DNA of 64,000 bases. It comes from Bugula neritina. Taxonomy: Eukaryota > Animalia > Bryozoa. This document shows, piece by piece, positions 242-19,071 of the stretch. Below the pieces are notes generated by a model that was given only the letters and a program-made list of their open reading frames with translations, was not told the DNA's origin and did not search any database. Position 1 is the first letter of the stretch; every line of letters begins with the position of its first letter. Made by a program: the position numbers and the translations under genes. The DNA lies in NCBI GenBank assembly GCA_964035545.1, contig OZ037765.1:32921504-32985503 (forward strand). The letters are read 5' to 3'.

Positions 242-379
242 TCTCTGTCAGCTGACTCAGTTAAAGATACTAGACATAGGAGGGAATCCTCTCAACACAG
301 TACCAGATGTTGTGTCATCACTCACATCACTTAAACAGTTGAATATGAGTCACTGTAGAATATCCAGTCTACCTGAGAG
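242..379 (+). CDS. LRR cassette exon A (138 nt, two 23-aa LRRs)
   Basis: ttattacAG|tctc...gagag|GTttgt; SLCQLTQLKILDIGGNPLNTVPDVVSSLTSLKQLNMSHCRISSLPE; phase 2-2. Confidence 0.9.
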
Positions 380-3300
380 GTTTGTGCTTCACACGCCTGT
401 TACTACTTCACAACCTCATTATTACCTTGATCCCTTTAAAGTATATCTGTACACAATTTATATTATGCAAAATAATATAAAGGATATAAATGTGTAGGTG
501 AATTTTGTACCCAGCTTAAAGTTTTGGTAAAACACAATGAGATGGGAAGGGTGGAGTGCATTATGATTTGAAAACCACCCTCTCTCATGAAAAGGTGGAT
601 TATAATTTTGTTCTACTTCTATATTAAAATATCCCAGCTATAACGTAAAATTATATTGCTACTTAGCATTTTGCTAAAGTTTTCATGTGGAAAGAATACT
701 AGATATAGGTTGTTACTAAAGAAAACAGTGGTCTAGGGGCTTGAACCCGACAAAGGCCATTAGTGATGTTAGGAAGACTACCCAGTACCCAGTCACAATT
801 GCTCCTGTGCCCCATCTGAATAAGTCCTTAGCCCAGTTTAACGAAAAATCATTTCATCGGGGATTTTCTCACAGGGATGGTGATTATAAATTTTCGTCAG
901 TTTTATTTTTAAATAAAGCGAACAAACCACTTGTTATATAAAGTACTAATACCTATTAGTGACATAATTTGTTACTGATCACTTATACATCAAATCTCAT
1001 TTATCTTATTAGATGAAACAATTTAAGGTAAAATATTGTGAAGATTGCAAAAAAAATATTTTGTTTTGTCGAGAGAACTTTTCGAAGCTATAAACTGCTG
1101 CATGATATTTCATTATCTTTCTGTTGTAAATTTTTATATTATATTCTTATATTACAGTTTCTCCCAGCTGACTCAGTTAGAGACACTAGACATGGTAGGG
1201 AATCCTCTCAACACAGTACCAGATGTTGTGTCATCACTCACATCACTTAAACAGTTGAATATGAGTAACTTTGGTATATTGAGTGTACTTGAGAGGTTTG
1301 TGTGTCACATGTTCATTACTACTTCACAACATCATTATTACTACTCTCTAACTTATATTTATACACAACTTATAGTGGGGCCATTTTACTTAATTTAGTA
1401 GACACTCAAAATCTCCAGTTTTTAGCTACTTTTCACAATTTGGCTGCTAATTTATATAGGTTTTTACCCAAAACTAACAAAATGTTAACAAAGACAACTA
1501 AATATTTCAGGTTCTTTTTAGTTTTGCTTAGTTTTCCATGTTTTTCCCCAATTGTTTAAGTAATTTGGAGCTTCGAACCATTACAAAAATTCTGTGACAG
1601 TCCGCAAATCTAAGTTAACTGATTAAATGGGGAAAAACATAGGAAATCAAGCAAACTTAAGAAGAACCTGGATTATTTAGTTGTATTTGTTAATATTTTG
1701 TTAGTTTTAGGCAAAAACCTATAATAAAAATTAGCAGCCAAATTGTGAAAAATAGTGTTGTAGTTTAGCGGATTACTACAAGTGTGGTGTTATTGTGTGC
1801 TTAGACTGCTAGAGCATAGCCCTGCTACGAGATTTACTTGAGAATCGAGCAGTGGTTGAGATTAGTTGACAATTATATTTATGATACTAATTACAAACCA
1901 AGTCACATCCAGTCAAAAAGACATACAAAAGAAAAAATATATATAGTAGTACAAGTAAGGAGCTTCGCACGGTATATCTGCATGGAACGAATGAATGCCC
2001 CCGGAAGGTCCTCCTTATAAGCGATGGTCTCCTCTGATTGGTTGGTGGCTTCTGGCAGGGGGACCGCAGCAGTAGTGGCGTATTATCCTGTGCCACTACC
2101 GCAGAGAGTGTGGTGTTTTAGAATGTTAGCCCAAGCCTAACAACGAGGATGCTATAATACTTTTGTGACTATAATATAGTTACGCTTTGCATGTAAGTGT
2201 TCGTATACCTAGTTGGCGGGAGATAGCGTATATGCTTCACGGCCATCACATCTCTACCCCACCAGCAGAAAATAAAACCTTCTGATTTCAAACCTAGGTA
2301 TCAGAACATAAAAAAATTTACATATTAAAAAAATACTTTGTAATATTGGATGATTAAAATTCGTAATAAAATAATAAAACAACAATAAAAAAGTCAGCTG
2401 TCCACTGTTACAGGGCGAAAAGATTGAAGCACCACAGTCAGTGAGGTTTGCATTTCAAAAAAAATATAACAAAAGGAAAGGAGCTATAAAAAGTTATTTT
2501 AAAAAGATGAATTTTAATTATAATGTACATTTTAGTATAAGCACCGAGATTGATGGCCAGATGAACAATTTGGCCAAAAAACACAGACTATCTGCCTGGC
2601 TTAGGGTGACGGGCTCTTCCTTTCTGTCCGGCGAGAGAGTCTTTGACACTGGCCAATTCAGTGATAACAGCCAGCAGCTGAGGAGTCAGCTGGCTCAATT
2701 TCTCTTCCAGCTTGTGGATGTGCTGCTCCAAGTCACAAATAATGCTGGATGAGCTAGGAATGGGAGATGGGCACGAGTGCCTCATCTTCTTTTCGGGCTT
2801 TTCCGCACCAGCGAATGTTATGAGGACCTGGAACCTTTGACCCAGTCGAGTCGTCAAATGACAACTCAAGGAGATGGAGGTCTCGAAGAAGAGGATCCAG
2901 GGGCATGAAAAGATAAAACGGATTCCTTAGCTCTAGACAACGACCAGCTGTGATGGCCCACCGGGAGAGAAAACCTTTGACAAGCTGTGACAACTGGCCC
3001 CAGTCCTGGACTGAGGTACTGATAATTTGGAAGAAATCCTTGGACATGGCAGCATCTACTTCAGGAAGGTGGCCCAAGTGGCATTTCATTGTCTTCTGAT
3101 TTCTGATGACATAGTCACGATTGTAACTGAATTCCCCACATGGGCAAAAGATCATTGCAAAGTGTTGGACAACATGGACACGTAAGTGACCGTAAGTCAT
3201 GAGCTGTTCTTGGCATAACTTTCAGGCTGTGTTATCAGGGGGCTCGAGTGTATTGATGATATCGATAAGGATAGATGGAAGAGTCCAATCTGACCGATGA

Positions 3301-6300
3301 TAATGAGCTGTGAGCAGTCCGCCATCTTTGAGTGCAGGCTGACTTTCTATCAGAGGTAAGGATTGAGTCTCCAGTATGGGGTTATCATCCCAGCTCATCT
3401 CTGGAGAAGACGGGGCACCCCGCCATGGCAGATAGAGTGGAATCTAAAAGAGCAAAATCAGGAGTAGATCTTTACTTCCCAACCTATGTGATTCTCAACT
3501 TTTAGCAACCTGTGAACCACTTACCCCTTTATATGGCACTTGCGAGACTATTGACAACTGCCTAGACTGATTAAGAGCAATAGATTCTAGATCTCCATCT
3601 AGTAGATCGTCTGTAATTACTAAGTTCTCATTGTCAATCGCGGTTGTCAATGTCCTCAGTAAGTCAAACTTAAACTGACTGTCTGAGTTGGACTGCACTG
3701 ACATCAGATCAGTTGCTCTAATAGTAAGCATACTTGATCTGAATGACTTACCTGCAATATCAGCAATTGAGTTCGCACTTAGATTATTAAAAGCTGTTGT
3801 ATCACAGACAGGTAGCGAGCGTCTCGCTCCATGGGTTGTCAATGTGAAAAAGACCGGGCCGCGTGGTTATTGCAAATAGTACAACTTTTGTGTCATTGGC
3901 AGATTAATCCCGCGCACTGCTCCACCTTCGCATTGAGAAAACTTTTTTTTTAATTGCACAGCTTCCACACCACCTGGAATGGTTCACCGCGGTGACTTCC
4001 GCCTAGCTCTTATTTTGCCGCGTTGCAAGCAGTCACATACAAAGTCCTGTAAGTAGGACATAGGCTCATTGTTAAGGCCAATGGTGGCTTCTCCTTTGGG
4101 GCTTCTGCCACCAAAGGAGGGGTCACGGGGACGGGAGTCCACTAGGACCTCTTCCTTATTACTGTGACTGGAACCTCTATTTAGAAACGGGATCCTCATT
4201 ATCCCAGGGATGGCAGTGGGGAGCCTGGTCAGGGCAACCGGCTTGTCCGTAGGTTGGGGTGGACAACTGGGGGCTCTGGTTCTATCTACCAGCCGCGGTA
4301 CTATGATTTTATACTCAGGACCGCGTCTCACCCGTCCGGACGCTGCTGGCTGCTTCCTGGGCTCAAGTAGCAAAAGTGCTTCACCCACTGTGTTGGGGCT
4401 GACCCAATATCGCGAGCTTCGTTCTGCACAGAGATCTGCCCAGACAACCTTACCTTGTGCATATGATTGGGCAAAGCCTCGACTACTAAGTAGGACCCCA
4501 CGAACATGGGCTGTAACTTAGCTGACTGCCCGCAGTGCCTAAAATAGCTAGCCATCCAGACCCAGTCCCGCGCCTGATAGAGCAGATGCTCCTCGAAATC
4601 TTCTTCCCGCAATTGGCATTGCTTCTCACAGAGCATGTCGTGTGCGGTTCTCATTTGTTCTACCAGTTCCTCTACGTACTCATGTGCAGAGCTTTCGAGG
4701 TTCGGAACAAGGTAGGTCAGGTGGTCGGAGATACGCGTCTCTCGACCCAGCATTAGGAAGTTGGGAGTCTCAGATGTGCTCATATGAGGCATGCTGCAGT
4801 ACGCATGCATAACCTGTGAGAGCACTGTATCCCATTCCACCTGTCTTTGGTCGAGAAGCAGACTCCGGAGAGCATCACCCAGCATGCTGTTGTTCTGTTG
4901 GACAATCCCATTGCCGTGTGGGTGATACGGGGTAGTCCTGCTCTGATTCACCCTGGGCACCTTGATCGGAGTGTATCTGTTTTGGCATACCCAGATAACA
5001 GAACACATGCTGCTCTAGGGCCCAGGCCACAGTTGAGGCCGACACATCTGGAATAGCTAGAGGGTAGCCCACCAATTAAAGTGGTCTGTGAGCATCAGAA
5101 TCCAATTGTTATCTTTGGGGGGTCGCGGGCATGGGGCCTACCAGGTCAAGAGCCATCACCTGCCAAAGTCGCCCTGTGTATAGCCGTCTCTGCCTCACAC
5201 TGTCTGGAGGGCGGCTGTGTTTACTGGCCTGGTAGATTTTACACTGTTTCACTTTCAGCCGCACATCACGACCCATCCACGGCCAACACCATCAGAGTTG
5301 CAATTTCTTGACCACTCGCTGGACCCCTACATGAGCCTGTTTGTGTGTGTCCCAAAACAACTCACGACAGATAGCAAAAGAACAAACTACTCTTTCGCGC
5401 CCTGGATGTCTGTCCTTAATGCCCAACGTGATAGTCAACAGACCATCTTTATTAAACCAAAGTGAATCCCAGCGGTGGCAGAACATCTGGAACTCAGTAC
5501 ATCACTGCTGCTGCTCCTCTTCACCGAGTAGCTTCCCTTCTTTGTTAGCCTTATAAATGTTGGTTACTACTCTAGGTAGCGTTTCCTGGAGTTTACGCAG
5601 CTCCGTGACATTCTCAGCCAAAACCGGATTAGCACAGAGAGTGTTTACAGTACCCATAGAGAGCTGGTCGTGAGCTCACCTTGTTCTCGGATGTAACCAC
5701 TGAGCAGATCAAACTGTGCTTCTATGTCAGAGCGAGGGGGCTTCATCTCTCTTCTCGATATTTAAGCACTGTTTGTACCCTCCCTCAGGACGTCGGCTTA
5801 GCCCATCTGCATTGCCTTGTTTTTTCTCAGGTCGGTGTTCGATCCGATAGGAAAACTCGGCCAGGATTTCGAGCCATTGTGCAACCTGACTGGAGGGTTC
5901 GGCTTTATTGCACAACTTGATCAGCTAGGCATAGTCTGTCCACAAGCGGAACATCATCCTGTATAGATAGGGTCGGCCAACGTGTCATTTTCCCTTTTGT
6001 CTCTCATTCTGAGTGTGTCAAAGAGTCGGCGGTTTAAGAGATTTGTAGTACACCGTTAATCCAGCAGGAAGGTGGCAGCTTTGCCGGCTAATTTGCCTCG
6101 CAAGAGGTAGCTACCACCATAGGGTTGTACTCTAGTTCTCTTAGCGTTCTCGACCTCTGTAGGTGACACTCCTCGAGCCTCGAGTGTAGACGGAGCCTGT
6201 GTCTGGTGGCTATGAGGTGGTCCTAGAAGTTGCAGAGGCACGTACATAGACTCGGGGTCCTGCCTCATCTCTTGGACAGACCACTCTTCTTGTGGCCTGT

Positions 6301-9300
6301 CGAAACGGTTTCGGAGTGGGCATGTGGTGGGAACAGGCCTGTTGGTCCTATTTGGCACCTGCCACTCAGTTGGTGGCACTGTTGACATTCTCGCCGGCTG
6401 TGAGTGGCTCCCCTGTGACCAGTGACTTATCTCCAGCCTGCGGTTGGCGGAAGAGGTTGTGGGCCGCAGTGGTTCAACTCCTGTCACCTGAGTTGCAGAC
6501 ACTCCCTGCAGAGATGTCCGCGGCTCCCGCATTCTCAGCATATTGGAGCTCGTCCTGTGGCAGTATCCACCCCCAATTTCTTGGGCCTCATAGCAGGTTT
6601 AGTCATTTGGAACTGCACCAGAGCCGCCACCAACTTGCCCACCATCTCTGTCAGGTGAGCGATGTCAGCAGCTAAGGAGGAGCTGGCCATGGAGACAACG
6701 TGAGCAGTTGGTTCAGACTCAAGTTTAGTACTCCGTAGCTCTGTCTCAACCTGGCAAGAACTCACTGGGCTTTTATGCAGCTGATTAACCTGCAAATAAG
6801 CCTCACTTTCCCTGAGTGCATCCTCGGCTGTTTTTACTCCGGTCGTCAGGAACTGGTGGTGAAGTCCCAGCTCGCCTAATGACTGTACAAAAGCGTCGTA
6901 GGTGTAGCGCTCCTGGTTTGCAGGTGACAATTCGCTGTGTGTGATTTCTGTCAACCATTTTACCGTGGCGTTATGTTCTTGCAAGGGTGTGTGTGGGTCA
7001 CGCCGCAACCCCAGCAAGTGAACCCTGGCGTCAATGCCTGAGAGGCCAAATCGGGCTAGTACGGTGGCAAAAATGCTGTCAACATTGGTTCCTAACTTGT
7101 AGGGTTTGGCCTTATCTGTCAACGCCAGCCACAGTTGTAAGAGTTCGACCCTAGGTGGCCACTGAGAGACGGTGACCACATCACTGAACTCTTGAATAAA
7201 TTTTTCCACGTTTGTTTGTTTGTTTGTTTTATTTTGTCGTAGTTGGAGAAAAAAAATTAATTGAGAAAAAATAAACAAAATGACAGGGCCTATGGCGCAA
7301 TAGCACTGTAGCTAGTCGAGGCGCCGAGCCATGAATGGTTGACAGTTATATAAGATTTTTGTTTAGGTTTTTGGAAGTTTTAGCAACTCAAAGAGTTTTA
7401 TTTTTTTATCTGGAAATTTGCCATTAGGTGGTCTCTCAGGGCAAATTTGAAACCAGCCTCCCTCTCCACAGCACGAATAGAACTAGGCAATTTATTCCAT
7501 AGCGACGAACATTGGAATTCCACTCTTCGTTGACCTGCAGCAGCAGCATAGTCTTCATTACTATTAAAAATGTGGGCTTTCAGGCAGTATTTGTCACCAG
7601 ATAGTTCTCTGTCTGCTTCCTCGCTCCGCGGTGTCAGATTACTAGGAACTTCAAGGTCTACAGGCTCACCTTCAGTCTCCGTTGGCTGCGCCGGTGGCCT
7701 GTCTTCCATCAGGACATCTCTCTCAGCGCCTCCCCCGTTAGGGTCGGACATCTGGAATTTTCTCTCCTAGTAGGATGGCAATTGCATCTGCACACAGAAA
7801 TCTCACTGCTGCTACCACTGTTGTAGTTTAGCGGATTACTACAAGTGTGGTGTTATTGTGTGCTTAGACTGCTAGAGCATGGTCCTTCTACGAGGTTTAC
7901 GTGAGAGACCCAAGTAGTGGTGGATATTAGTTGGAAATTATATTTATAGTACTAATTACAAACAAAGTTGTGTCCCGTTAAAAAAACATACACAAGAAAA
8001 AATATATATAGTAGTACAAGTAATGAGCTTTGCACGATATATCCACATGGAACATATGAATGCACCTGGAAGGTCGTTCTTGTAAGTGAAAGGTCTCCTC
8101 TGCTTGGCTGGTGGGTTCTGGCAGGGGGGCCGCTGCGGTAGTGGCGTATTATTCTGCACCACTAGAGAGTGCGGTACTTTACAATGTTAGTCCAAGCGTA
8201 ACAATGATGATGCTATAATACTTTTGTTATTATTATAATATAGTTACGCTTCGTACGTAAATGTTTGATACATAGTGGGCGGGAGATAGTGTATATGCCT
8301 CATGGTCATCACAATAGCTAATAACTGAAGTTTTTGCGTGTGTACTAATTAAAGCAAAATGACCCAGTAATATAACATAAAATAATTTACAGGATATAGA
8401 ATAAAGCTGTAGTCTCTGTACTGTGGCTGAGTTCCATGTGCTATATAATGAGCTGGTAAGGATGCAAAGTGAAGATTGGAAAAGCTAATATAAACCTTTT
8501 ATAGGGCTATGAGTTGGATTATGAAAGGAGTTGTATTATTGTATATATCAAAATGTTATATAGTTTATAATAGTTGTATACATTATATGTTATTAGGAGT
8601 TGAATATACAGCACTGATGCAGTTTATATTTTATATTGTTATATTGAATTCTCTATAAGCTTAGAGCCACAGGGCGCAGGTTTTCTGCATGCGGGTCCAA
8701 ATTTTTGAAAACTCATTGTGGGAACAATCTGTCACACACAATGCGTGGGTTGTGGATGCAGAAGTTTGTTAGCTAATGATCTTGGAGTTTAACTTTACTG
8801 CTGCCTACCGACGTTTGTTTTTAAATGTATGTCATCGGCAAAGTGACTTCAGATAATATTAAAGCGGAAATGCAAACTACACAAAGCTGTTTTAATTCAG
8901 TTCAATATAAATTAAAACTTGAATTGAAATTCTGCACTCGCCGCTCAGCATACGTTATCTACATAAAAACACGCACACAACAGCCCACATGAGTAACCCT
9001 AGTAGTGTGGCTCTACACTAAGCTGACTAGGTAATTCGTAATAATTATGTAATGACTCACTATTCTTAGCAGTGAATAAAAAAGAGCTGCTTAAAACTAA
9101 CCAGCAAGCTTTGTGCAAAATCTCCTAAAACTTTCACAAATTATATTATTCAGACCTGTTTACTCTGAATATTTTGAAGCAAAACAGCATCCCGACATAA
9201 AGATGCAAATAATGAAAATATAATCTACCATGTATTGAACCAGAACTAGTATTATTCTGTCATGATAATACTGTATGAAATTTGTATTATATCCATTGCA

Positions 9301-12300
9301 TTCAATATATGAGGTACTATTATCCTGCTTTACTCAGGATGTTGTTTTGAATGATACTCAATATTTCTGTGAAATACTGAGATGCGATATTTAACTCATA
9401 CACATATCAATACTGCATATGATGCTTATATTGTATGTAGTTATTTTCTCTTCTTATATTCTGTATATATTTATGTTCCAGTATGTATCAGCTGACTCAG
9501 TTAGAGACACCAGAAGAGACACCAGACATGGAAGACAATAGCTTCACCACAGTAAGAGCTTTTGTATCATCACCTAAACAGTTGAAGATAAGTAGATCTG
9601 GAAAATTCAGTCTGCCTGAAAGGTTTGTGTGCCACATGTTTATTACTACTTCACAACATCATTATTGCCTTCTAGTTTTAAATTATAATTATACACTACT
9701 TATAGTATGTAAATTAATATACAGGATACAGAGGGTAGCTTTATATAACTTTTAGGCTTAACCTGAGATTCCTGTGTTATACAATAAACTGAATAGGGTG
9801 CAGTGTAAGTATTTATAGAGCCACCCTATCTTATGGCTATATGAGTTGAAATATGAACAAACTTGTACTTTCCTACAAGACAACAATTAGGTAAAGATTT
9901 ACACGAGTTTCAAAGCACATATATTGTATTGAGCACAAAGAAGGTTATCCACTGCCAAAATTGCCCCAGGTGATTTTAGGTAAAAATACATGGCACAGGT
10001 AAAAATGGCACTAGTAATTAAGGGCATAAATGGAAAAGTAGGAAAAAAGCCACACTAATGTTAAATTTTCACAAAGCCTCAACCCATGAAACCCAACCCA
10101 AACTCAAACTCCCATTTCCAAACCTAAATCCTCACCCCAAACACCTAACCTCACCCAAACCCTAAAATTGAAAATGTGACATTTTTTCCTACTTATCCAT
10201 TGTTATCATTTTTGCCAGTGCCATTATTACCTGTGCCATTTTTACCTGTGCCATCTTTATCAGACACCGCCACAGGTAGTTGAACCCTAGAAATGATATT
10301 GCATAGCTTCTATTTATCTCTTGTGAGAACAAAAGTAATTGTAATTGTAATATTGATTACTTTGCCATGTAATTGTAAATAATTACATTACTTTTTAACT
10401 GTAATTATAATTGTAATTGTAATTGACAAATTTTCATGTAATTGTAATTAATTACATTCCCATGTAATTGACCCCAAGTTAAAATTAATCTATATATAGC
10501 AACTATTACTTGATGAGTTGTAGAGAATGAAACTAATTGTTTACTTTGTCGCAGAGTGCACTTACATTTATATTTCTGATGTAGTACATGTAAGCACATT
10601 ATAGAAACTAGCTTATATAATTATTGTAATCAGCTTTGATAATCTAAATCCAACTGCATTGTACATTAACATTGCATTGCTATCAGTTCAGCTTTCCTAA
10701 TTGTTGTCAAATGAATATTTTGAAGTTTAATAGAGATGATGAACAGAATAGTTTGACTTTTAAGACAGTTGACTCTTTAAATATTAATTTTAGCTCAGAA
10801 TATTCTACAATATAATGGTAGATATTTATAGTTTAGACACACCACAAGATCATGGCGGTAAATGGTGACCAAGTATTTTGTGGTTTTCACTTAATAAATT
10901 ACTGACTCTTAATATTACTATTAGTCACCACTTACTATGCTCATGTTACAAGTTGTTCTTAGCTTATAGCAGTTGGTGTTATTGCAGCACTTATTTTCTT
11001 AGAGATTAAATGTTATAAAGCTGAGCTAGATTCTTTTTCTGTAAAAAGGTGTTTATAATAGAAAGTGGTTTACTTGCCTCTCATCAAAAGACAAACTCAT
11101 TGTTTAAACAGTTTCACTTTTTTTATTATTTCAAAGCTTTCTTTAGAAAATTTAACTTTTTCTCAAAATTCTTTCAAGAATAATTTCTTGTTGAATTCTC
11201 TATCTAACAAAACTTAGAAAATTTTGCAGCTGTATATTAAAAAACTCCGAAATCTTCATGAATGCATGTTAGTCCACAGCTTCCAAATATATATAATTTC
11301 AAACTCTTAACATTATACTTTTAAAAATTGCAAGAAACGGGACAAACAATTGTTACTGCCATATTTATTTATTAGATGCCGAGTTGTTTTGACTTTTAGT
11401 TTGAGTAAGCTAGCTAGGAAAAGAATACATTTTGTAGTTAAAGTTTAATTGTTCAAATTATTTGTAAGCTTCAAATAGAAATTGGTACTTCTATGTTTGC
11501 TCAAAATTTTTATTTTGTTGTTCATTCCAATTTTCTATTTCAACAAATGTGATGCTATATAGGTTAAATAAAATAATAAGTTAAAAATTTTATGTAATAG
11601 CTGATATATCTTAAAACAGTTGTGGCTTCCTGCCTATATCTGTATTGAATAAAGTAATTATGTTGTATGTGATTTTATTCTCTTCTCACTATGTATATCT
11701 TAATACTACAGTTTCAGTCAGCTGACTCAGTTAGAGATACTAAACATAGGGTGGAATCCTCTGAACACAGTACCAGATGTTGTGTCATCACTCACATCAC
11801 TTAAACAGTTGGATATGAGTGGCTGTAGTATATCCAGTCTACCTGAGAGGTTTGTGTGTCGCATGTTTATTACTACTTCACAAAATCATTTATACCTCAC
11901 TTTAAACAGGATTTATATTCAACTTGTTGTATATAGACAAGATACTACGATCAACAAGCTGGGACATACAACTAATAATTGAACATTTCTATATTATTGT
12001 AAATTATACATATTTATGTTGTTGTATACCTTTATATTGCAGTCTCTCCCAGCTGACTCAGTTAGAGAATCTAAACATAGGAGGGAATCCTCTGAACACA
12101 GTACCAGATGTTGTGTCATCACTCACATCACTTAAACAGTTGAATATGAGTAGATGTGATATATCCAGTCTACCTGAGAGGTTTGTGTGTCACATGTTTA
12201 TTACTACTTCACAACATCATTTATACCTCACTTTGAACAGTATTTATATTCAACTTATAGTATATAGACAAGATACCACAATCAACAAGCTGGGACATAC

Positions 12301-15300
12301 AAGCAATAATTGAACATTTCCATATTATTGTAAATTACACATATTTATGTTATTGTATACCTTATATTGCAGTCTCTGTCACATGACTCAGTTAGAGATA
12401 CTATAAGACATAGGAGAGAATCCTCTCAACACAGTACCAGATGTTGTGTCATCACTCACATCACTTAAACAGTTGAATATGAGTATATGTGGTATATCCA
12501 GTCTACCTAAGAGGTTTGTGCGTCACATGTTTATTACTACTTCACAACAACATTATAGTACCTCACTTTAAACAGTATTTATATTCAACTTGTTGTATAT
12601 AAAGTATAATATGGAGTAGCTATAGTCTGACTGTGCTGTGTTATACAATGAAATGGTAAGGGCGGAGTGCAATAATATGGAAATCCACCCTTGAGCATGG
12701 TCATGGATTTTAGCCAATACCACGATATTAGGAATAAAATATTCAATTATTTATAAAAAACACAAAATATTTATTCCTGCTGCATTATTGAAGTATCACA
12801 GTGCTCTATCAACAAGTTCATATTTATGCAAGTATTTAATTCAGAGTTTGATAAACATAATTATATAATCTCTAGATTTAGGGGTACATAACAGTGACTA
12901 TTGATCACAGGTTAATAATGATGAAATAGTCATAAAAAAGGTGTGAAAACAATACCAGTAATAAATAGTTATAGCATCAACTAGCTTTATTTGTCACCCA
13001 TTTTAAAAATAAAAAGAACAGCCGACACCCTAACTATTTAATATGCAAAACCTGCAGATTTCTTCATTGATAAGACGTTGCTGATTAAATTGTATAGTGA
13101 TGTATACTATGTATAGTAATATATACTATGTATAGTAATGTATACTATTTATAGTAATATGTACTATGTATAGTAATGTACACTATGTATAGTGATGTAT
13201 ACTATGTATAATGATGTATACTATGTATAGTAATGTATACTATGTATGGTATTGTGTACTATGTATAGTAATGTATACTATGTATAGTATTGTATACTAT
13301 GTTTAGTAATGTATACTATGTATAGTAATGTATACTATGTATAGTAATGTATACTATGTATAATGATGTATACTATGTATAGTAATGTATACTATGTATA
13401 GTGATGTATACTATATGTATAAAAGTATATAATATGTATAGTAATGTGTACTATGTATAGTAATGTATACTATATATAGTAATGTATAATATGTATAGTA
13501 ATGTATACTATGTATAGTAATGTATACTATATATAGTAATGTATAATATGTATAGTAATGTATACTGTGTATAGTAATGTATACTATGTATAGTAATGTA
13601 TACTATATATAGTAATGTATAATATGTATAGTAATGTATACTATGTATAGTAATGTGTACTATGCATTGTGATGTATACTATGTATGGTGATATATACTA
13701 TATATAGTATTGTATAATATGCATAGTGATGTATACTATGTATAGTAATGCATACTATATGTATATTAGTATATAATATGTATAGTAATGTATACTATGT
13801 ATAATAATGTATACTATATATAGTAATGTATAATATGTATAGTAATGTATACTGTGTATGGTATTGTGTACTATGTATAGTATTGTATACTATGTATAGT
13901 AATGTATATTATATGTATAGTAATGTATATTATGTATAGTAATGTATAATATTTGTAGTAATGTATACTATGTACAGTAATGTATACTATGTATAGTGAT
14001 GTATACTATGTATAGTGATGTATACTATGTATATATGTGATGTATACTATGTATAGTGATGTATACTATGTATAGTAGTGAGTATACTATACATAGTGAT
14101 GATATACTATGTGTAGTAATGTATACTATATGTATATATAGTGAAATAAGGATAATTCAGTAAGCTATGTAATCTAATTTTATTATTTGCATTCATATAA
14201 AGCTCCAAAAAATTTCTCTCGTGTCAATTTGACTAAATTATATCAATAAATACTAACAAACATTGTCCTTATATAGCATTGTGAGCCTCTTAAACCTCCA
14301 GCGTCTGGATATCTCTAATGGAAGGTATCCACTGAACCAGGAGCCTAAAAACCAGATCACATGTTTACCTGATAACTTCAGCCAGTTATCTAGCTTGGGA
14401 ACTCTTGACCTCAGTGGAAACGATACTCTGAAAGTTCTGACACCAGAGATAGCTGACATGCCTCTACTAACAAAATTATGTGCTGATGGTTGTGAGTCAT
14501 TGACTTCACCACCATATGAAGTTTGTCAACAAGGAGCAGGTGCCATCAAGCAATACTACACAGACATTAGGAACCATGACAGTGTAGAGGTTTCCATGGT
14601 AACTGTTGCTGTCATTGGTCAGACTATGTCTGGCAAGACTAGTCTGATTAAGACACTACAGAGTACAGATAGAACCAGAGTTCTTACTCACAGAGTAGAA
14701 GGTGGACTTGATGATGATACGACCCCAGTGTTCAAAATGGAAGATGTTTGTGTAGATAACGATGTGTTGAGATTCATTGACTTTGGAGGTCATGAAATCT
14801 ATCAGTCGACATATCAGTTTACGTTGAAACCAAATTGTATCCCAGTTGTTGTTGTGAGTTTGGAGCAGTATGAAGCCCTGCAGCATGATATTGGTGGTAA
14901 TGAGGCAGTGAGGCGACTGTATTTTGATTGGTTGTCACATCTCTACCTGACCTATCCTAACCTCGGACCTCCTAACTTGGTGTTGACTCATTTGGATAAA
15001 ATTGATGAAAGCGAGCTTGAAGACATTCAAGACAGTTTTTTTAGCCACACGAAGCATGTTTTTGAAATCATCAGTCGCGATGAAAAGAGCAAGTGGAAAA
15101 ATGGAGGTGCTTTTGCAATAATTAAACATTTTGAAGCAAAGAATATGTTCAAAGCTGAAGATATTTATAAAGTTGGAAATGCTTACTGTGAAGCTTTCAT
15201 CCAGCTAAAAAAGAGATTGCTGAGAGAGAGTAAGCAGTTTGTGAAAGCAATACCAACAACCTGGGTGAAAGTTGAACAAGCCTTGAAGAATTTCAAAAAA

Positions 15301-18300
15301 GGTTACATGTCATTCCAAGATATCTTCAGCCAGTTGTCTAGCAGCATTTCATTAACTGAAAATCAACTTGACATCATCCTGACATACATGCACAACTGTG
15401 GCATGTTGCTCTGGTACAAGGAGGATGTGGACTTGCGTCCTTACATATTCTATCACATCCCCACAGTTACTTCACTCCTCCAAGTTCTGTTTACTCATGA
15501 TGACACAGTTTGGCAGCGTCGTCTGTCAGATTTTGCTAATCCTACTTCTGCTGGTCAACAATTCCTCACACTAAATGAATACAGGTTGTTTGCTGAAAGA
15601 TTTGCTTCAACAGGAATCATGCATGGTAAGATGTTCAAACATTTGTTAAGAACCGAAACAGACTTTCAAGAGAATGCTGCAATGAGAGTTGCGGCTCAAA
15701 TTTTGCTCTCATTCAGAATAATGTATCGCTCTACACTACAGAATGAAGAGAGCTCTTTCATTGCGCCATACTTCTGCAAGGAGTTCCTTAGTGACAACTT
15801 ACCCAACACAGGGAATTGTGTCACCTTTCATGCTCAGCTACGTTTTGATGGTCTTCCACTTCCACAGTATGCCTACCACCAGCTTGCTGTGGACATGGTC
15901 AATTCTTTCTCTCAAGAGTCAGACTGCATAACAGCCAGAAATAATGGAGCTCATGTGGTGAACAAAGATGTAACCTATCAGCTTGTACATGACTACAAGT
16001 CAGGAATAGTAAACATTTGTGTTTCCTTTGACTCCAGACAAGTATGCAGAGCATGGGAAGTTCTGGTTGACATCACCAACTCCTCTATTGAATACATTGA
16101 GACCAGATGGTGTGCCTGTAAAATAGGATGTAAATTCTTCTGTGCTCACTGTGAGCTAGAACAAGACCACCACCCATTTAGCCTCATGAATCCTTCTTGG
16201 GTCCAGTACCATGGCAAGAGATCGGCGCCCTTACCTCCCTCTTTCTTGCCTAATCAGCTCAGATGTAAGAACTTTTTTATTGTTTGCATTACTACTGCTA
16301 ATAAGCAACTATCAACGTTAATTCTTTGAGCTGTGATGCTTCATATTTACATTTATGTCGATTGTCCGACTTTAGCACAGCAGCTCAATGATTATGAAGA
16401 TTTCAATGCAGAGCTTGACTACTTTAAAAATAGACGTCTCTTCTCTAGCCACAGACATCACAATGTAAATTGGATTGCTGAATCAACTGGTGGGAAGATA
16501 TTTAGATGCAAGAAAGATTCTTCCACACCTTCATGTCTCCTCAACCCTTGTGAGTACTTTATACACTCATAATATAAAAACGGTTTTGCAGTATCATTGC
16601 TTATACAAATTGTGTAGTGTTTCTGAACCTAGTTATTACATTTCTCAAAATTCACTAGTTTATTACCATAATATGTGTTGCAGGCTCCAGTTTGTCTGAA
16701 GAAGAGAGCGAATGTCTTTCAAGTTATCTCAGCAAATATCAAAAGCCCAAGTCTACAGGTACTGTATGTTCATCCTATTATACTAATGTTTGTTATAGTA
16801 ATTATAGAAAGAATCTGAGTATGAAGTAAACATATGATCAGTGTGTGAGTATTTAAAAAACTCTGAATGTATATGTATATGCAACATATACTGTGATGTA
16901 TTACTATAAAAAGTCTATAAAATAATGTAGCATATTATTATAATAATAAATTCAGGTGAGATTCAAATTGAATCTGATAATGAAGGAACTGATGCTGATA
17001 GTGATATCTCTGAACACGAAGACTTCAGCTCACCACAAGAAGCCGGTAACATCAAAATGGAAGTTTCTGAGACCAAGAAAAAAAAGATAAAACGTCTGTT
17101 CTATTCTAATGAGGTACTTTAATAAATATTTTATAGTTGTTAGGTATGAACTACATAGTTCAAATATTTTATTTATAAAGTATTATTTGTGGTGAAATAT
17201 CTTTCACTTATAAAAACATGTTGCTCTTTTGAGTATGGTAAATGCACAATGAATTTTTTCTGCTTTCTACCAACCAGTTGAGCGCAGCTGAATTTAGTAA
17301 ATTTAATTATAGAGTTCAGTTGCATTTATATTTTCATTGGTGCTGTAGAGTATTGCAGTGAATGCTGTCTGCAAAATCCCATAAAATTATTCAATCTTAT
17401 CAAACAAATAAGAGAATGATCACCAGTTGTTAAAAAAATTTATAGGTGTATAAAATGAGTGAGACAGCAAGAGGAAGAGCTCTGATTATCAACAACAATG
17501 TTTTCCGTGATAGACCCGAGCTCTATAGAGAAGGATCTGCAGTGGATGTGTCTAATATCCGAGCAGTTTTGGCACATTTGAACTTTGAAGTAGATGTGAG
17601 ACGTGACAGAACTGCTGAGGTGTCCAAACATATAATGCCATATTTTGTTATACTTGTAAACATTAGACATTTCATATTATTCCTATATACTATATTTAAT
17701 CTCATGATTTATTCACAGGAAATGCCGAAGGATATCAAAGATGAGACTCAAAACCCTGACAATGAAGACTATGGTATGCATGTCACTGTACTCATGTCTC
17801 ACGGTGGAACATTTGGTGCTCACGGAGTTCTGTATGGGACTGATGTGAAACCAGTGAAGCTTCTCGATGTCTTTGATTTGTTGTCTTCCGACAACTTCAA
17901 GCACATGGCTGGAAAACCTAAAGTTGTGATCGTGGTAGCTTGTAGGAGTGGTGAGTTGTACATATATCTTAACGCTACTCATATCATACAGGTAAATCTT
18001 TATAACGCTGAAAAGTTTACAGCTCTCCAAATGGCATGTTTTATTGTCTTTCTATGAATAAACTATTATTTTGCTTATTTTTATTTAAAATTTCTTGTAT
18101 CTTATTTCTGTACCATAGATCACTAAGTCTTGTATCTATCCCAGCAGACAGATACAATAGATAGAGTAATGCTTCTTTCACATCTATATAATATAACTAT
18201 TGGAATTTGTAGCTGCCACAGATGCCCTGATAGAGAGAGTAGAAGCTGAGTCTGAAGAGAGTTCAGCCACACAGGAAACTCAACAGGAAACTCAACAGGA

Positions 18301-19071
18301 AACTCAACAAACTCCAAGTAGACAAAATGACTTGAATGTTGATGATCTGTTGATACTGCAGTCTTGCTTTGATGGTAAATCTTTGTGCTACTTGTAAATG
18401 ATGATACTGTCTAGTATATGTATCTATATGTTGGTAGCTGTAAGAATTCTCTAATTAGCTGTTGAGGTTTAGACTGTTATATACTTTTTCTTAAAATAGG
18501 AGTACCGCAATATTACTTTCTACAAAACTCTTAATTTATAAATGCCGTATAATTTATGTTTTCTGTTGTTGCTGACCATTAAGATTTATCATGTAATTTA
18601 AGCCTAAAATGTAGAGTGTATGCAGCAATGTATCTCAAGTATATTAGTGTCAGGTCAACTCTTTCAAACAGAGAAGAAACTATTTTTTAGGTCGGAACTC
18701 TATACGAGATGCAAACTATGGAAGTCCATTCATCAGAGAGTTGGTTAAAACTCTGTACAAACACTCTTCCCATAGAGATCTTGCTACTCTGTTTGATATC
18801 GTAAGTGTGCAATATTTGTCTTTGGTACAGATACTGAGAAGTTTCCAGATGTCTCCTGATATAGGAGATTCAGAGATGTACAGGTGTTCTATTAGTCTGA
18901 TAAACTGATACCTTGTTACAGGTGCAAAGAAGAGTCAAGAAAGTTACTAAAAAGATCTCTGAGACACGTCCGGAATTTTCTGAGCAGGTGCCGATAACGA
19001 CAAAGACTCTCACAGACATGAGGAAAATTTTCTTATTTCCTAAACACAAGATTTCTTCCCCAGCAGAATAG
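242..19071 (+). CDS. Multi-exon gene (5' incomplete): LRR cassettes - ROC GTPase - COR - Cys-rich motif - acidic linker - caspase (p20+p10)
   Basis: Canonical AG/GT boundaries with compatible phases join 14277-16264, 16376-16549, 16684-16758, 16956-17113, 17446-17619, 17719-17950, 18213-18374, 18691-18800 and 18922-19071 into one open frame of about 1,070 codons ending TAG at 19069-19071. The upstream LRR exons are phase 2, matching the phase-2 acceptor at 14276. Confidence 0.85.
719..890 (+). mobile_element. SINE fragment (tRNA-like head, V-domain-like core)
   Basis: Homologous to the reverse complement of 25248-25434; core gtgatgttaggaaga... resembles the V-SINE domain. Confidence 0.55.
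1158..1295 (+). CDS. LRR cassette exon B (138 nt)
   Basis: tattacAG|tttc...gagag|GTttgt; SFSQLTQLETLDMVGNPLNTVPDVVSSLTSLKQLNMSNFGILSVLE; phase 2-2; 3' end has lost the C and LP consensus residues. Confidence 0.85.
2588..3443 (-). pseudogene. Decayed ORF3 (Zn-finger + coiled coil) of Gypsy 1
   Basis: A*KLCQEQLMTYGHLRVHVVQHFAMIFCPCG...C and ICDLEQHIHKLEEKLSQLTPQLL align with ORF 34494-35281; stop and frameshifts. Confidence 0.8.
7211..7550 (-). mobile_element. 5'-truncated CR1/L2-group LINE 3' end inserted in gag of Gypsy 1
   Basis: Interrupts gag between NED and VEKFIQEF; encodes SLWNKLPSSIR...FKFALRDHL* typical of the CR1/L2 ORF2 C-terminus; 3' tail aataaaa(caaa)n. Confidence 0.75.
9482..9622 (+). 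CDS. Degenerate LRR cassette exon C (141 nt, frame preserved)
   Basis: gttccAG|tatg...gaaag|GTttgt; MYQLTQLETPEETPDMEDNSFTTVRAFVSSPKQLKISRSGKFSLPE; 12-nt duplication plus 9-nt deletion; many consensus Leu lost; same downstream intron motif as the other cassettes. Confidence 0.65.
9967..10269. mobile_element. Palindromic MITE with internal (CCTAAC)-like tract
   Basis: ggcacaggtaaaaatggcac at the left vs gtgccatttttacctgtgcc at the right; central aaccct/cctaac-like repeats. Confidence 0.6.
10335..10480. repeat. (GTAATT)n-rich subterminal remnant of a DNA transposon
   Basis: Clustered gtaattgtaattg repeats ending gtaattgaccccaag. Confidence 0.45.
11712..11849 (+). CDS. LRR cassette exon D (138 nt)
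   Basis: actacAG|tttc...gagag|GTttgt; SFSQLTQLEILNIGWNPLNTVPDVVSSLTSLKQLDMSGCSISSLPE. Confidence 0.9.
12043..12180 (+). CDS. LRR cassette exon E (138 nt)
   Basis: attgcAG|tctc...gagag|GTttgt; SLSQLTQLENLNIGGNPLNTVPDVVSSLTSLKQLNMSRCDISSLPE; 331 bp after exon D (tandem unit). Confidence 0.9.
12373..12513 (+). pseudogene. LRR cassette exon F (141 nt) with in-frame TAA
   Basis: Intact AG/GT sites; reads SLCHMTQLEIL*DIGENPLNTVPDVVSSLTSLKQLNMSICGISSLPK; 3-nt insertion gives TAA at 12404-12406; 330 bp after exon E. Confidence 0.85.
13091..14140. repeat. 19-bp minisatellite (TGTATAGTAATGTATACTA)n, about 55 units
   Basis: Direct tandem array of about 1.05 kb. Confidence 0.95.
14277..16264 (+). CDS. 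Large exon: terminal LRRs + ROC GTPase + COR domain (ROCO/MFHAS1-like)
   Basis: Branch point TACTAAC 14251-14257, AG 14275-14276. LRR cap LTSPPYEVCQQG; P-loop GQTMSGKTS; switch II FIDFGGHEIY; G4 LTHLD; COR motifs IPTTWVKVE and YMHNCGMLLWY; CAHC near the end; donor GTaaga at 16265. Confidence 0.92.
16376..16549 (+). CDS. Post-COR exon (ends ...IFRCKKDSSTPSCLLNP)
   Basis: tttAG|ca...t|GTgagt, phase 1-1, 174 nt, open; C-terminal motif resembles the C-x(n)-P-x2-L-x2-P end of MFHAS1-type ROCO proteins. Confidence 0.7.
16684..16758 (+). CDS. Linker exon (CSSLSEEESECLSSYLSKYQKPKST)
   Basis: ttgcAG|gc...acag|GTactg; 75 nt; phase 1-1; open. Confidence 0.75.
16956..17113 (+). CDS. Acidic linker exon with basic patch (GEIQIESDNEGTDADSD...KKKKIKRLFYSNE)
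   Basis: ttcAG|gt...gag|GTact; phase 1-0; open. Confidence 0.8.
17446..17619 (+). CDS. Caspase large subunit exon 1
   Basis: tatAG|gtg; VYKMSETARGRALIINN...REGSAVD matches the caspase Y-x-M...RG-x-ALIINN...R-x-G-x3-D motif; phase 0-0. Confidence 0.9.
17719..17950 (+). CDS. Caspase large subunit exon 2 (catalytic His and Cys)
   Basis: cacAG|gaa...g|GTgagt; LMSHG (His 17800-17802), GKPKVVIVVACRS (Cys 17941-17943). Confidence 0.92.
18213..18374 (+). CDS. Caspase intersubunit linker and start of small subunit
   Basis: ttgtAG|ct...g|GTaaat; AATDAL...QETQQETQQETQQ...DDLLILQSCFD; phase 1-1. Confidence 0.85.
18691..18800 (+). CDS. Caspase small subunit exon
   Basis: ttttttAG|gt...atc|GTaagt; GRNSIRDANYGSPFIRELVKTL matches the S-W-R...GSWFI motif. 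Confidence 0.9.
18922..19071 (+). CDS. Caspase terminal exon
   Basis: ttacAG|gtg; VQRRV...EQVPITTKTLTDMRKIFLFP...* matches the caspase Q-x-P...TL...F-x-FP end; possible polyA signal ATTAAA at 19303-19308. Confidence 0.9.
   Translation: MQRRVKKVTKKISETRPEFSEQVPITTKTLTDMRKIFLFPKHKISSPAE

What the first reader, a model, noticed from the sequence alone, without database searches (positions are those of the whole stretch)
242..12513. Array of interchangeable phase-2 two-LRR cassette exons
Seen: six homologous exons of 138 or 141 nt, all phase 2-2 and multiples of 3, each followed by the same intron motif (GTTTGTGTGTCACATGTTTATTACTACTTCACAACATC); D-E-F form 330/331-bp tandem units. Any subset can be spliced, gained or lost without breaking the frame to the ROC exon. 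Established analogies: exon-shuffled LRRs of Ectocarpus ROCO genes, Dscam exon arrays, lamprey VLR cassettes. Inference: a combinatorial specificity module for the ROCO-caspase.
Basis: partly seen in the sequence, partly recalled or inferred. Interest (0 to 1): 0.9.

Follow-up and report, generated by a model that had tools for sequence, protein, structure and literature searches.

The report
Bryozoan ROCO-caspase LRR exon cassettes
Six near-identical exons build the variable sensor arm of a moss-animal (bryozoan) gene that joins leucine-rich repeats, a GTPase switch and a caspase in one protein; the variety is made in the germline by exon duplication, sequence exchange and selection, two of the six exons are damaged, and pick-and-mix splicing is not shown.

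Summary
The six exons are real: 138/141 nt, AG/GT, phase 2-2, two LRRs each, with D-E-F spaced 331/330 bp. "Any subset keeps the frame" needs correcting: F carries an in-frame stop, C is degenerate, and a seventh cassette plus the ATG-bearing exon lie just upstream of the window. The gene is an LRR-Roc-COR-caspase, very likely of Bugula neritina. It is one of eight close paralogues with 4 to 21 cassettes, in a family of at least 67 Roc exons. Shown: diversifying selection on concave-face codons (omega about 3.6), a recombination signal within exons, and framework silent sites 1.5-5 times more alike between genes than the Roc exons are. RNA contigs show family-level cassette-to-cassette and cassette-to-Roc splicing, which argues against one-of-many Dscam-type choice, but show no skipping. 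The intron "motif" is a lineage-specific donor flank with no docking partner. Watersipora has the same exon design; an amphioxus protein has the same domain order and 46-residue unit. Best reading: a germline-diversified candidate immune or cell-death receptor that works like brown-algal ROCOs. I found no paper on it in bryozoans. The scan has reported this family at other loci of this genome.

The parts
242..379 (+). Cassette A: intact two-LRR exon, 138 nt, phase 2-2. It is the second cassette of the gene; cassette Z and the ATG-bearing exon lie 370 and 807 nt upstream of the window.
1158..1295 (+). Cassette B: open frame, 138 nt, with some framework changes in its second LRR
1426..1755 (.). 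Palindromic MITE-like insertion in the B-C intron
   Evidence: inverted repeats I1, I6
1756..8313 (-). Decayed Gypsy-type LTR retroelement in the B-C intron; LTRs about 84% alike, 4-bp target-site duplication (described only)
9482..9622 (+). Cassette C: 141 nt, open frame but degenerate first LRR; belongs to an older degenerate lineage with three copies in the upstream paralogue; no RNA contig depth in runs X1 and X2
11712..11849 (+). Cassette D: intact, 138 nt
12043..12180 (+). Cassette E: intact, 138 nt
12181..12218 (+). Donor-flank sequence shared by the cassettes of this subfamily (reference copy); conservation fades within 20-40 nt of the donor
12373..12513 (+). Cassette F: 141 nt, splice sites intact, in-frame TAA at 12404-12406 from a 3-nt insertion
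   Evidence: not seen in contigs
13091..14129 (.). 19-bp minisatellite (54 copies) in the F-Roc intron; a matching stretch lies in the upstream paralogue
14277..16264 (+). Large exon: capping LRRs, Roc GTPase (P-loop GxxxxGKT, DxxG) and COR; phase 2 acceptor; open frame
16376..17113 (+). Three linker exons (16376-16549, 16684-16758, 16956-17113), open and in phase
17446..19070 (+). Five caspase (Peptidase_C14) exons ending at the stop codon; catalytic His (SHG) and Cys (VACR) present in 17719-17950

Best explanation
The exons encode the leucine-rich-repeat arm of a single-chain LRR-Roc-COR-caspase protein of a cheilostome bryozoan. Shown: (a) each exon gives a 46-residue, two-LRR unit in symmetric phase, so whole exon-plus-flank units can be duplicated or deleted without breaking the frame; (b) this has happened repeatedly in the germline, giving 4 to 21 cassettes in eight close paralogues; (c) the strand-exposed codons change faster than silent sites while the framework stays uniform, even at silent sites, across genes; (d) cassettes of this family are spliced to each other and to the Roc exon. 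Inferred: unequal crossing-over and gene conversion centred on the exons homogenise the framework and remix the variable codons, and selection keeps new binding faces. Most intact cassettes are included in genomic order to give one long solenoid per gene. Ligand binding to the concave face changes the Roc-COR nucleotide/dimer state and brings the caspase domains together, as an intracellular immune, symbiont or self/non-self sensor. In this copy F carries a stop, so the allele is either null or works only when F is skipped.
For: Anatomy and phases. Eight first exons pair with eight Roc exons; cassette counts 21, 7, >=4, >=4, >=13, >=9, 5, 4. Selection on 46 distinct exons: dN(exposed)/dS(all) 3.7, bootstrap 1.9-6.6; framework 0.44; codon model omega 3.6 vs 1, 2dlnL 21; framework 0.64. 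Homogenisation: framework four-fold sites differ 0.03-0.08 between genes whose Roc exons differ 0.12-0.19, and about 0.04 between units whose acceptor-side introns are near saturation. Recombination: PHI-like test p 0.005-0.017; each intact cassette of this gene is nearest to a cassette of another gene. All six independent exonic indels are 3n and only F has a stop among about 55 cassettes, so cassettes are normally translated. RNA-like runs cover exons and not introns, with a GT..AG joint at the D-E intron and loose ends matching a Roc exon start and a first-exon end. The same 138/141-nt phase-2 exons occur in Watersipora, and RefSeq models there join LRR, Roc-COR and caspase.
Against: No ligand, tissue or functional data; the immune role rests on architecture and selection. 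RNA evidence is from contigs of other individuals at 90% likeness, so it is family-level and cannot show or exclude skipping in this gene. Recombination can inflate omega, and I saw the alignment before fixing the site classes (they follow the LxxLxLxxNxL rule). Low silent divergence could partly reflect splicing constraint rather than conversion. The fusion with the caspase in this gene is inferred from phases and homologue models, not from one transcript.
Confidence: 0.7

Rival explanations
1. On top of germline diversity, cells choose subsets of cassettes by regulated alternative splicing (or, less likely, somatic recombination), giving a combinatorial receptor repertoire per gene. F would be a poison exon and the donor flank a splicing element.
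For: Symmetric phase permits any skip. F has intact splice sites, yet the rest of the gene is open and its Roc exon shows no relaxed selection (10 amino-acid-changing vs 12 silent lineage-specific changes; paralogue 13/13). Watersipora RefSeq models leave out intact and stop-bearing cassettes. The first 20 nt after the donor are 94% alike among cassettes. Brown-algal ROCOs have splice variants (PMC11378527).
Against: No skip joint (such as D to F or C to E at exon boundaries) among the listed joints (21 joints not shown). No docking/selector complement beyond shuffles, no consistent recombination-signal heptamer, no inverted cassette. The donor flank is not shared with Watersipora or with another subfamily. 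RefSeq omissions are gene models, not isoform evidence.
Confidence: 0.2
2. The array is neutral tandem-duplication debris in a decaying gene; this copy is a pseudogene and the cassette pattern has no role in specificity.
For: F stop, degenerate C, a 6.6-kb retroelement in an intron, and one paralogue with a stop in its Roc exon. C has no depth in RNA runs X1 and X2.
Against: Omega above 1 at exposed codons and below 1 in the framework; all exonic indels keep the frame; all other exons of this gene are open with catalytic motifs intact; the family is expressed; the design is kept in Watersipora. This copy may well be a null allele, but that does not make the array neutral.
Confidence: 0.07
3. 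The stop in F is an assembly error or one allele of a heterozygote, and the usual allele encodes a full protein with F included. This is compatible with the best explanation and concerns only F.
For: In DNA run X11, which matches the window with no differences in several unique stretches, all contig depth at 12403 (449.1) is accounted for by contigs lacking the three bases (240.8 + 208.3).
Against: Those contigs may be paralogues laid at 90% likeness; contigs drop variants and a filter removes some records. A non-homopolymer 3-nt insertion is an unusual error in an assembly whose other cassettes are clean.
Confidence: 0.3

Closest known systems
Brown-algal ROCO genes with one-LRR exons (Ectocarpus, Saccharina; PMC3341825, PMC11378527)
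   Same: LRR-Roc-COR; LRR arm built from symmetric phase-2 exons; exon number varies between recent paralogues; intra- and intergenic recombination; diversifying selection on concave-face sites; dead exons kept in introns.
   Different: Here each exon is 138-144 nt with two LRRs (72 nt, one LRR in algae); a C-terminal caspase is fused; no inverted exons were found; splice variants are annotated in Ectocarpus but not shown here.
Amphioxus LRR-Roc-COR-caspase protein (Branchiostoma floridae BRAFLDRAFT_67388, UniRef100_C3XQ16; database entry)
   Same: Same domain order with Peptidase_C14, and an LRR arm made of 46-residue two-LRR units 36-49% identical to cassette E in register.
   Different: Its exon structure could not be retrieved; Roc-COR similarity is remote (28%, E 1e-14). 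It shows that the domain order is not confined to bryozoans.
Watersipora subatra 'MFHAS1 homolog' RefSeq genes (e.g. XP_067932967.1, XP_067949579.1, XP_067947674.1)
   Same: Same family: 138/141-nt phase-2 two-LRR exons with the same boundaries, one large Roc-COR exon, caspase downstream or fused.
   Different: Own donor-flank sequence and framework; automatic annotation only, no study found.
Human MFHAS1/MASL1 and LRRK1/2; bacterial LRR-Roc-COR proteins, including the Runella Roc-COR-CHAT protease that cleaves a gasdermin (10.1101/2021.06.07.447441) and AP-GTPase conflict systems (PMC8195603)
   Same: LRR-Roc-COR core (PDB hits to bacterial Roco proteins and LRRK2); in bacteria, fast-evolving LRRs and variable C-terminal effectors including caspase-like proteases.
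   Different: Human genes are single-copy, have no caspase and, from my own knowledge, no cassette array; bacterial genes have no exons.
Dscam1 mutually exclusive exon arrays; lamprey VLR cassettes (own knowledge)
   Same: Tandem homologous modules; as in VLR, variability sits on the LRR concave face.
   Different: Dscam picks one exon per array by docking/selector pairing; here cassettes join each other and no docking site was found. VLR genes are incomplete in the germline and are assembled somatically from non-exonic cassettes; here the germline gene is complete.

Membership tests
ROCO family | Roc GTPase domain followed by COR | tested here: met
   COR-A above cut-off (E 9e-10), Roc E 1e-4 (below cut-off) with P-loop and DxxG motifs; PDB hits to bacterial Roco and LRRK2
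ROCO family | GTP binding/hydrolysis and dimer switch | not testable with these tools
   Motifs only
Caspase (C14) fusion | Peptidase_C14 domain with His-Cys dyad in the same reading frame | tested here: met
   Pfam above cut-off; SHG and VACR motifs; exon phases continuous from Roc exon to stop; fused in Watersipora and amphioxus models. No single transcript seen for this gene.
Brown-algal-type exon-shuffled ROCO | LRR arm encoded by symmetric same-phase repeat exons | tested here: met
   All phase 2-2, 3n; two LRRs per exon instead of one
Brown-algal-type exon-shuffled ROCO | Exon number and order remodelled between recent paralogues, with recombination | tested here: met
   7 vs 21 cassettes in neighbours 91% identical downstream; PHI-like p 0.005-0.017; nearest neighbours in other genes
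Brown-algal-type exon-shuffled ROCO | Diversifying selection on concave-face codons | tested here: met
   omega 3.6, 2dlnL 21; pairwise ratio 3.7
Brown-algal-type exon-shuffled ROCO | Intact exons inverted on the non-coding strand | tested here: not met
   All 28 cassettes in 264 kb are on the coding strand; the 61 donor hits follow gene orientation
Brown-algal-type exon-shuffled ROCO | Alternative splicing of LRR exons | tested here: inconclusive
   Contigs only, other individuals, no skip joint listed
Dscam-type mutually exclusive array | Only one array exon per mRNA | tested here: not met
   Cassette-to-cassette GT..AG joints in X2 and X3, with an offset equivalent in X1; family-level
Dscam-type mutually exclusive array | Docking site complementary to a selector at each exon | tested here: not met
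   Best duplexes of the donor flank with eight intron regions lie within about 1 kcal/mol of the shuffled range; acceptor-side selectors were not tested exhaustively
VLR-type somatic assembly | Incomplete germline gene with non-exonic donor cassettes | tested here: not met
   Complete gene; cassettes have splice sites and lie between first exon and Roc exon
VLR-type somatic assembly | Rearranged genes in somatic cells | not testable with these tools
   One assembly; no raw somatic reads

The most novel reading that the evidence does not exclude
A colonial invertebrate makes a combinatorial intracellular receptor repertoire within an individual, by regulated cassette skipping or by homology-driven somatic exchange using the near-invariant exon framework, wired directly to a caspase and used in pathogen, symbiont or colony self/non-self recognition.
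Probability: 0.18. Interest if true: 0.88.

Novelty: new variant of a known kind. Interest (0 to 1): 0.6.

Why it matters
It shows an animal gene family using the exon-module design so far described for brown-algal ROCOs, here coupled in one chain to a caspase and expanded to at least 67 genes. Bryozoans fuse or reject as colonies and B. neritina carries a vertically transmitted bacterial symbiont (own knowledge), and I found no paper naming their recognition receptors. These genes give concrete, genotypable candidates. The measured pattern (uniform framework, hypervariable face, variable length) makes direct tests of isoform diversity, segregation with fusion outcome and ligand-gated caspase activity possible. 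The amphioxus entry suggests the architecture may be older and wider than one phylum.

Tried and rejected
Docking/selector pairing of the donor flank: no better than shuffles. Recombination-signal heptamers: sporadic only. Inverted cassettes: none. Donor flank as a deeply conserved element: rejected, since Watersipora and another subfamily have different flanks. Search for full-length transcript-derived proteins: only RefSeq models and single-exon ORFs. Single-sequence fold of a Watersipora LRR region: low confidence (pLDDT 46), strands fall at the expected LxLxxN positions, not relied on. The RNA loose end matching a Roc exon start is not this gene or the upstream paralogue exactly, so it was not used as evidence that F is skipped. 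Literature searches found no paper on bryozoan ROCO, or on an animal ROCO-caspase; the library lacks most subscription journals. Retroelements were described only.
Full report
Observation. Each has AG/GT ends, is 138 or 141 nt and is phase 2 at both ends; all junction codons among them and with the Roc exon are sense codons. D-E-F form 331/330-bp units whose two introns are 93% identical. The 38-nt donor flank follows each, with 0 to 7 mismatches. Three corrections apply. F has a 3-nt insertion that reads TAA in frame (12404-12406), so including F ends translation before Roc. C is degenerate in its first LRR. A seventh cassette (C1:32921133) and an ATG-bearing, phase-2 exon (C1:32920696-32920925, itself preceded by an acceptor site) lie just upstream of the window.

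The gene. After F and a minisatellite-bearing intron come a 1988-nt exon with capping LRRs, Roc and COR, three linker exons and five caspase exons. All are open, in phase, and the P-loop, DxxG, SHG and VACR motifs are present. The best named homologues are Bugula neritina proteins at about 80% identity, so the genome is very likely B. neritina or a sibling type (inference). A decayed Gypsy element with LTRs 84% alike fills the B-C intron; by that measure it is older than the D-E-F duplication.

The family. Eight Roc exons are 81-100% identical and 59 more are near 40% (a lower bound). Eight close first exons pair with the eight Roc exons. Cassette counts are 21, 7 (this gene), at least 4, at least 4, at least 13, at least 9, 5 and 4; the cassette peptide has 790 first-look candidates genome-wide, 150 of them scored. 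The upstream neighbour is 91% identical from the last intron to the gene end but has three times as many cassettes, in blocks that repeat. Another B. neritina assembly has 3-4 cassettes within the fetched flanks of four related genes. Watersipora subatra has the same 138/141-nt phase-2 exons with the same boundaries but its own donor flank, and RefSeq models that join LRR, Roc-COR and caspase. An amphioxus database protein has the same domain order and the same 46-residue two-LRR unit.

How the diversity is made. Among 46 distinct intact exons, variation is concentrated at codons 9, 11, 13, 14, 16, 34, 36, 37 and 39, the strand-exposed positions of LxxLxLxxN/CxL. dN at exposed codons is 3.7 times overall dS (bootstrap 1.9-6.6), and 0.44 times in the framework. 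A codon model gives omega 3.6 against 1 (2dlnL 21) and 0.64 for the framework. Recombination may inflate these values. The framework is unusually uniform: its four-fold sites differ by 0.03-0.08 between genes whose Roc exons differ by 0.12-0.19, and by about 0.04 between units whose acceptor-side introns are near saturation. A PHI-like test finds recombination within exons (p 0.005-0.017), and each intact cassette of this gene is nearest to a cassette of a different gene. I read this as exon-centred unequal crossing-over and gene conversion plus diversifying selection; splicing constraint on silent sites is a rival cause. All six independent indels in cassettes keep the frame and only F has a stop, so cassettes are normally translated.

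The intron motif. Identity is 94% in the first 20 nt after the donor, 77% in the next 20, then 70% or less. It is not shared with Watersipora or another subfamily and has no partner sequence better than shuffles. It is best read as the donor site plus the tail of duplicated or converted tracts. A splicing role is not excluded.

RNA. Only assembled contigs from other samples were available, and their RNA origin is a guess by the tool. Runs X1 and X2 cover D, E and F but not the unique intron stretches. A GT..AG joint matches the D-E intron, and loose ends match a Roc exon start and a first-exon end of paralogues. So the family is spliced as modelled and cassettes join each other, which argues against one-of-many choice. 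No skip joint appears among those listed. C has no depth in X1 and X2. Nearly all contig depth over the F insertion lacks the three bases, including all of it in DNA run X11, which matches the window exactly elsewhere. Those contigs may be paralogues, so the stop may be homozygous, heterozygous or an error. The Roc exon of this gene shows no relaxed selection, so the stop is recent or bypassed.

Mechanism and verdict. Most likely (0.7): a germline-diversified sensor arm, mostly spliced in order, on a one-chain sensor-switch-protease; ligand binding would act through Roc-COR to activate the caspase (inferred from ROCO and caspase biology, untested). Regulated combinatorial splicing or somatic exchange remains possible (about 0.2) but has no direct support; skipping of five intact cassettes gives at most 32 forms. 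It works like brown-algal ROCOs (PMC3341825, PMC11378527) and differs in two-LRR exons, the fused caspase and the lack of inverted exons. It fails the tested defining features of Dscam arrays and VLRs. I found no paper describing it in bryozoans. Earlier notes of this scan describe the same family at other loci; they agree but were not used as evidence. Class: new variant of a known kind. Interest 0.6.

Noticed in passing
window:1756-8313: Decayed Gypsy-type LTR element in the B-C intron, inserted next to a palindromic MITE-like element (1426-1755); LTRs about 84% alike, 4-bp target duplication.
   Followed up: partly
window:33896-41402: A second LTR element on the minus strand; a 96% identical copy sits at the matching place in the upstream duplicated unit, whose own LTRs are 99.7% alike.
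   Followed up: no
window:44225-48373: Open 1383-codon Gypsy gag-pol frame (protease, RT, RNase H, integrase), apparently a young element. Described only.
   Followed up: no
window:19000-64000 versus L045-L050: The whole gene plus about 45 kb of spacer is tandemly duplicated upstream at 86-97% identity, so the cluster grows by roughly 70-kb units as well as by single exons.
   Followed up: partly
G000:C1:33081851 (locus L005): A fold-back junction just after a cassette donor: the exon end reappears inverted, followed by unrelated sequence. Other insertions also start within about 25 nt of the donor flank (C1:32842472, 33583056).
   Followed up: no
G000:C1:32824142, 32837502, 32842472 and window:9482-9622: A lineage of degenerate cassettes with prolines in the first strand; all copies keep an open frame through three separate 3n indels. 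They may be translated spacers rather than dead exons.
   Followed up: partly
window:26025-26492 (minus strand); L055:17222-20124: A Ras-like small GTPase gene or remnant lies downstream of the caspase on the opposite strand, within the duplicated unit.
   Followed up: no
window:18271-18309: A 12-bp coding tandem repeat (QETQ) in the caspase inter-subunit linker; its length appears to differ in the upstream paralogue.
   Followed up: no
L061:23630-23770 and L056:21966-22103 (Watersipora): A stop-bearing cassette with intact splice sites, and intact cassettes left out of RefSeq models, mirror cassette F in another genus.
   Followed up: partly
P0162 (Branchiostoma floridae): Amphioxus LRR-Roc-COR-caspase with the same 46-residue two-LRR unit, annotated as SHOC-2-like; exon structure not retrievable here.
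   Followed up: partly
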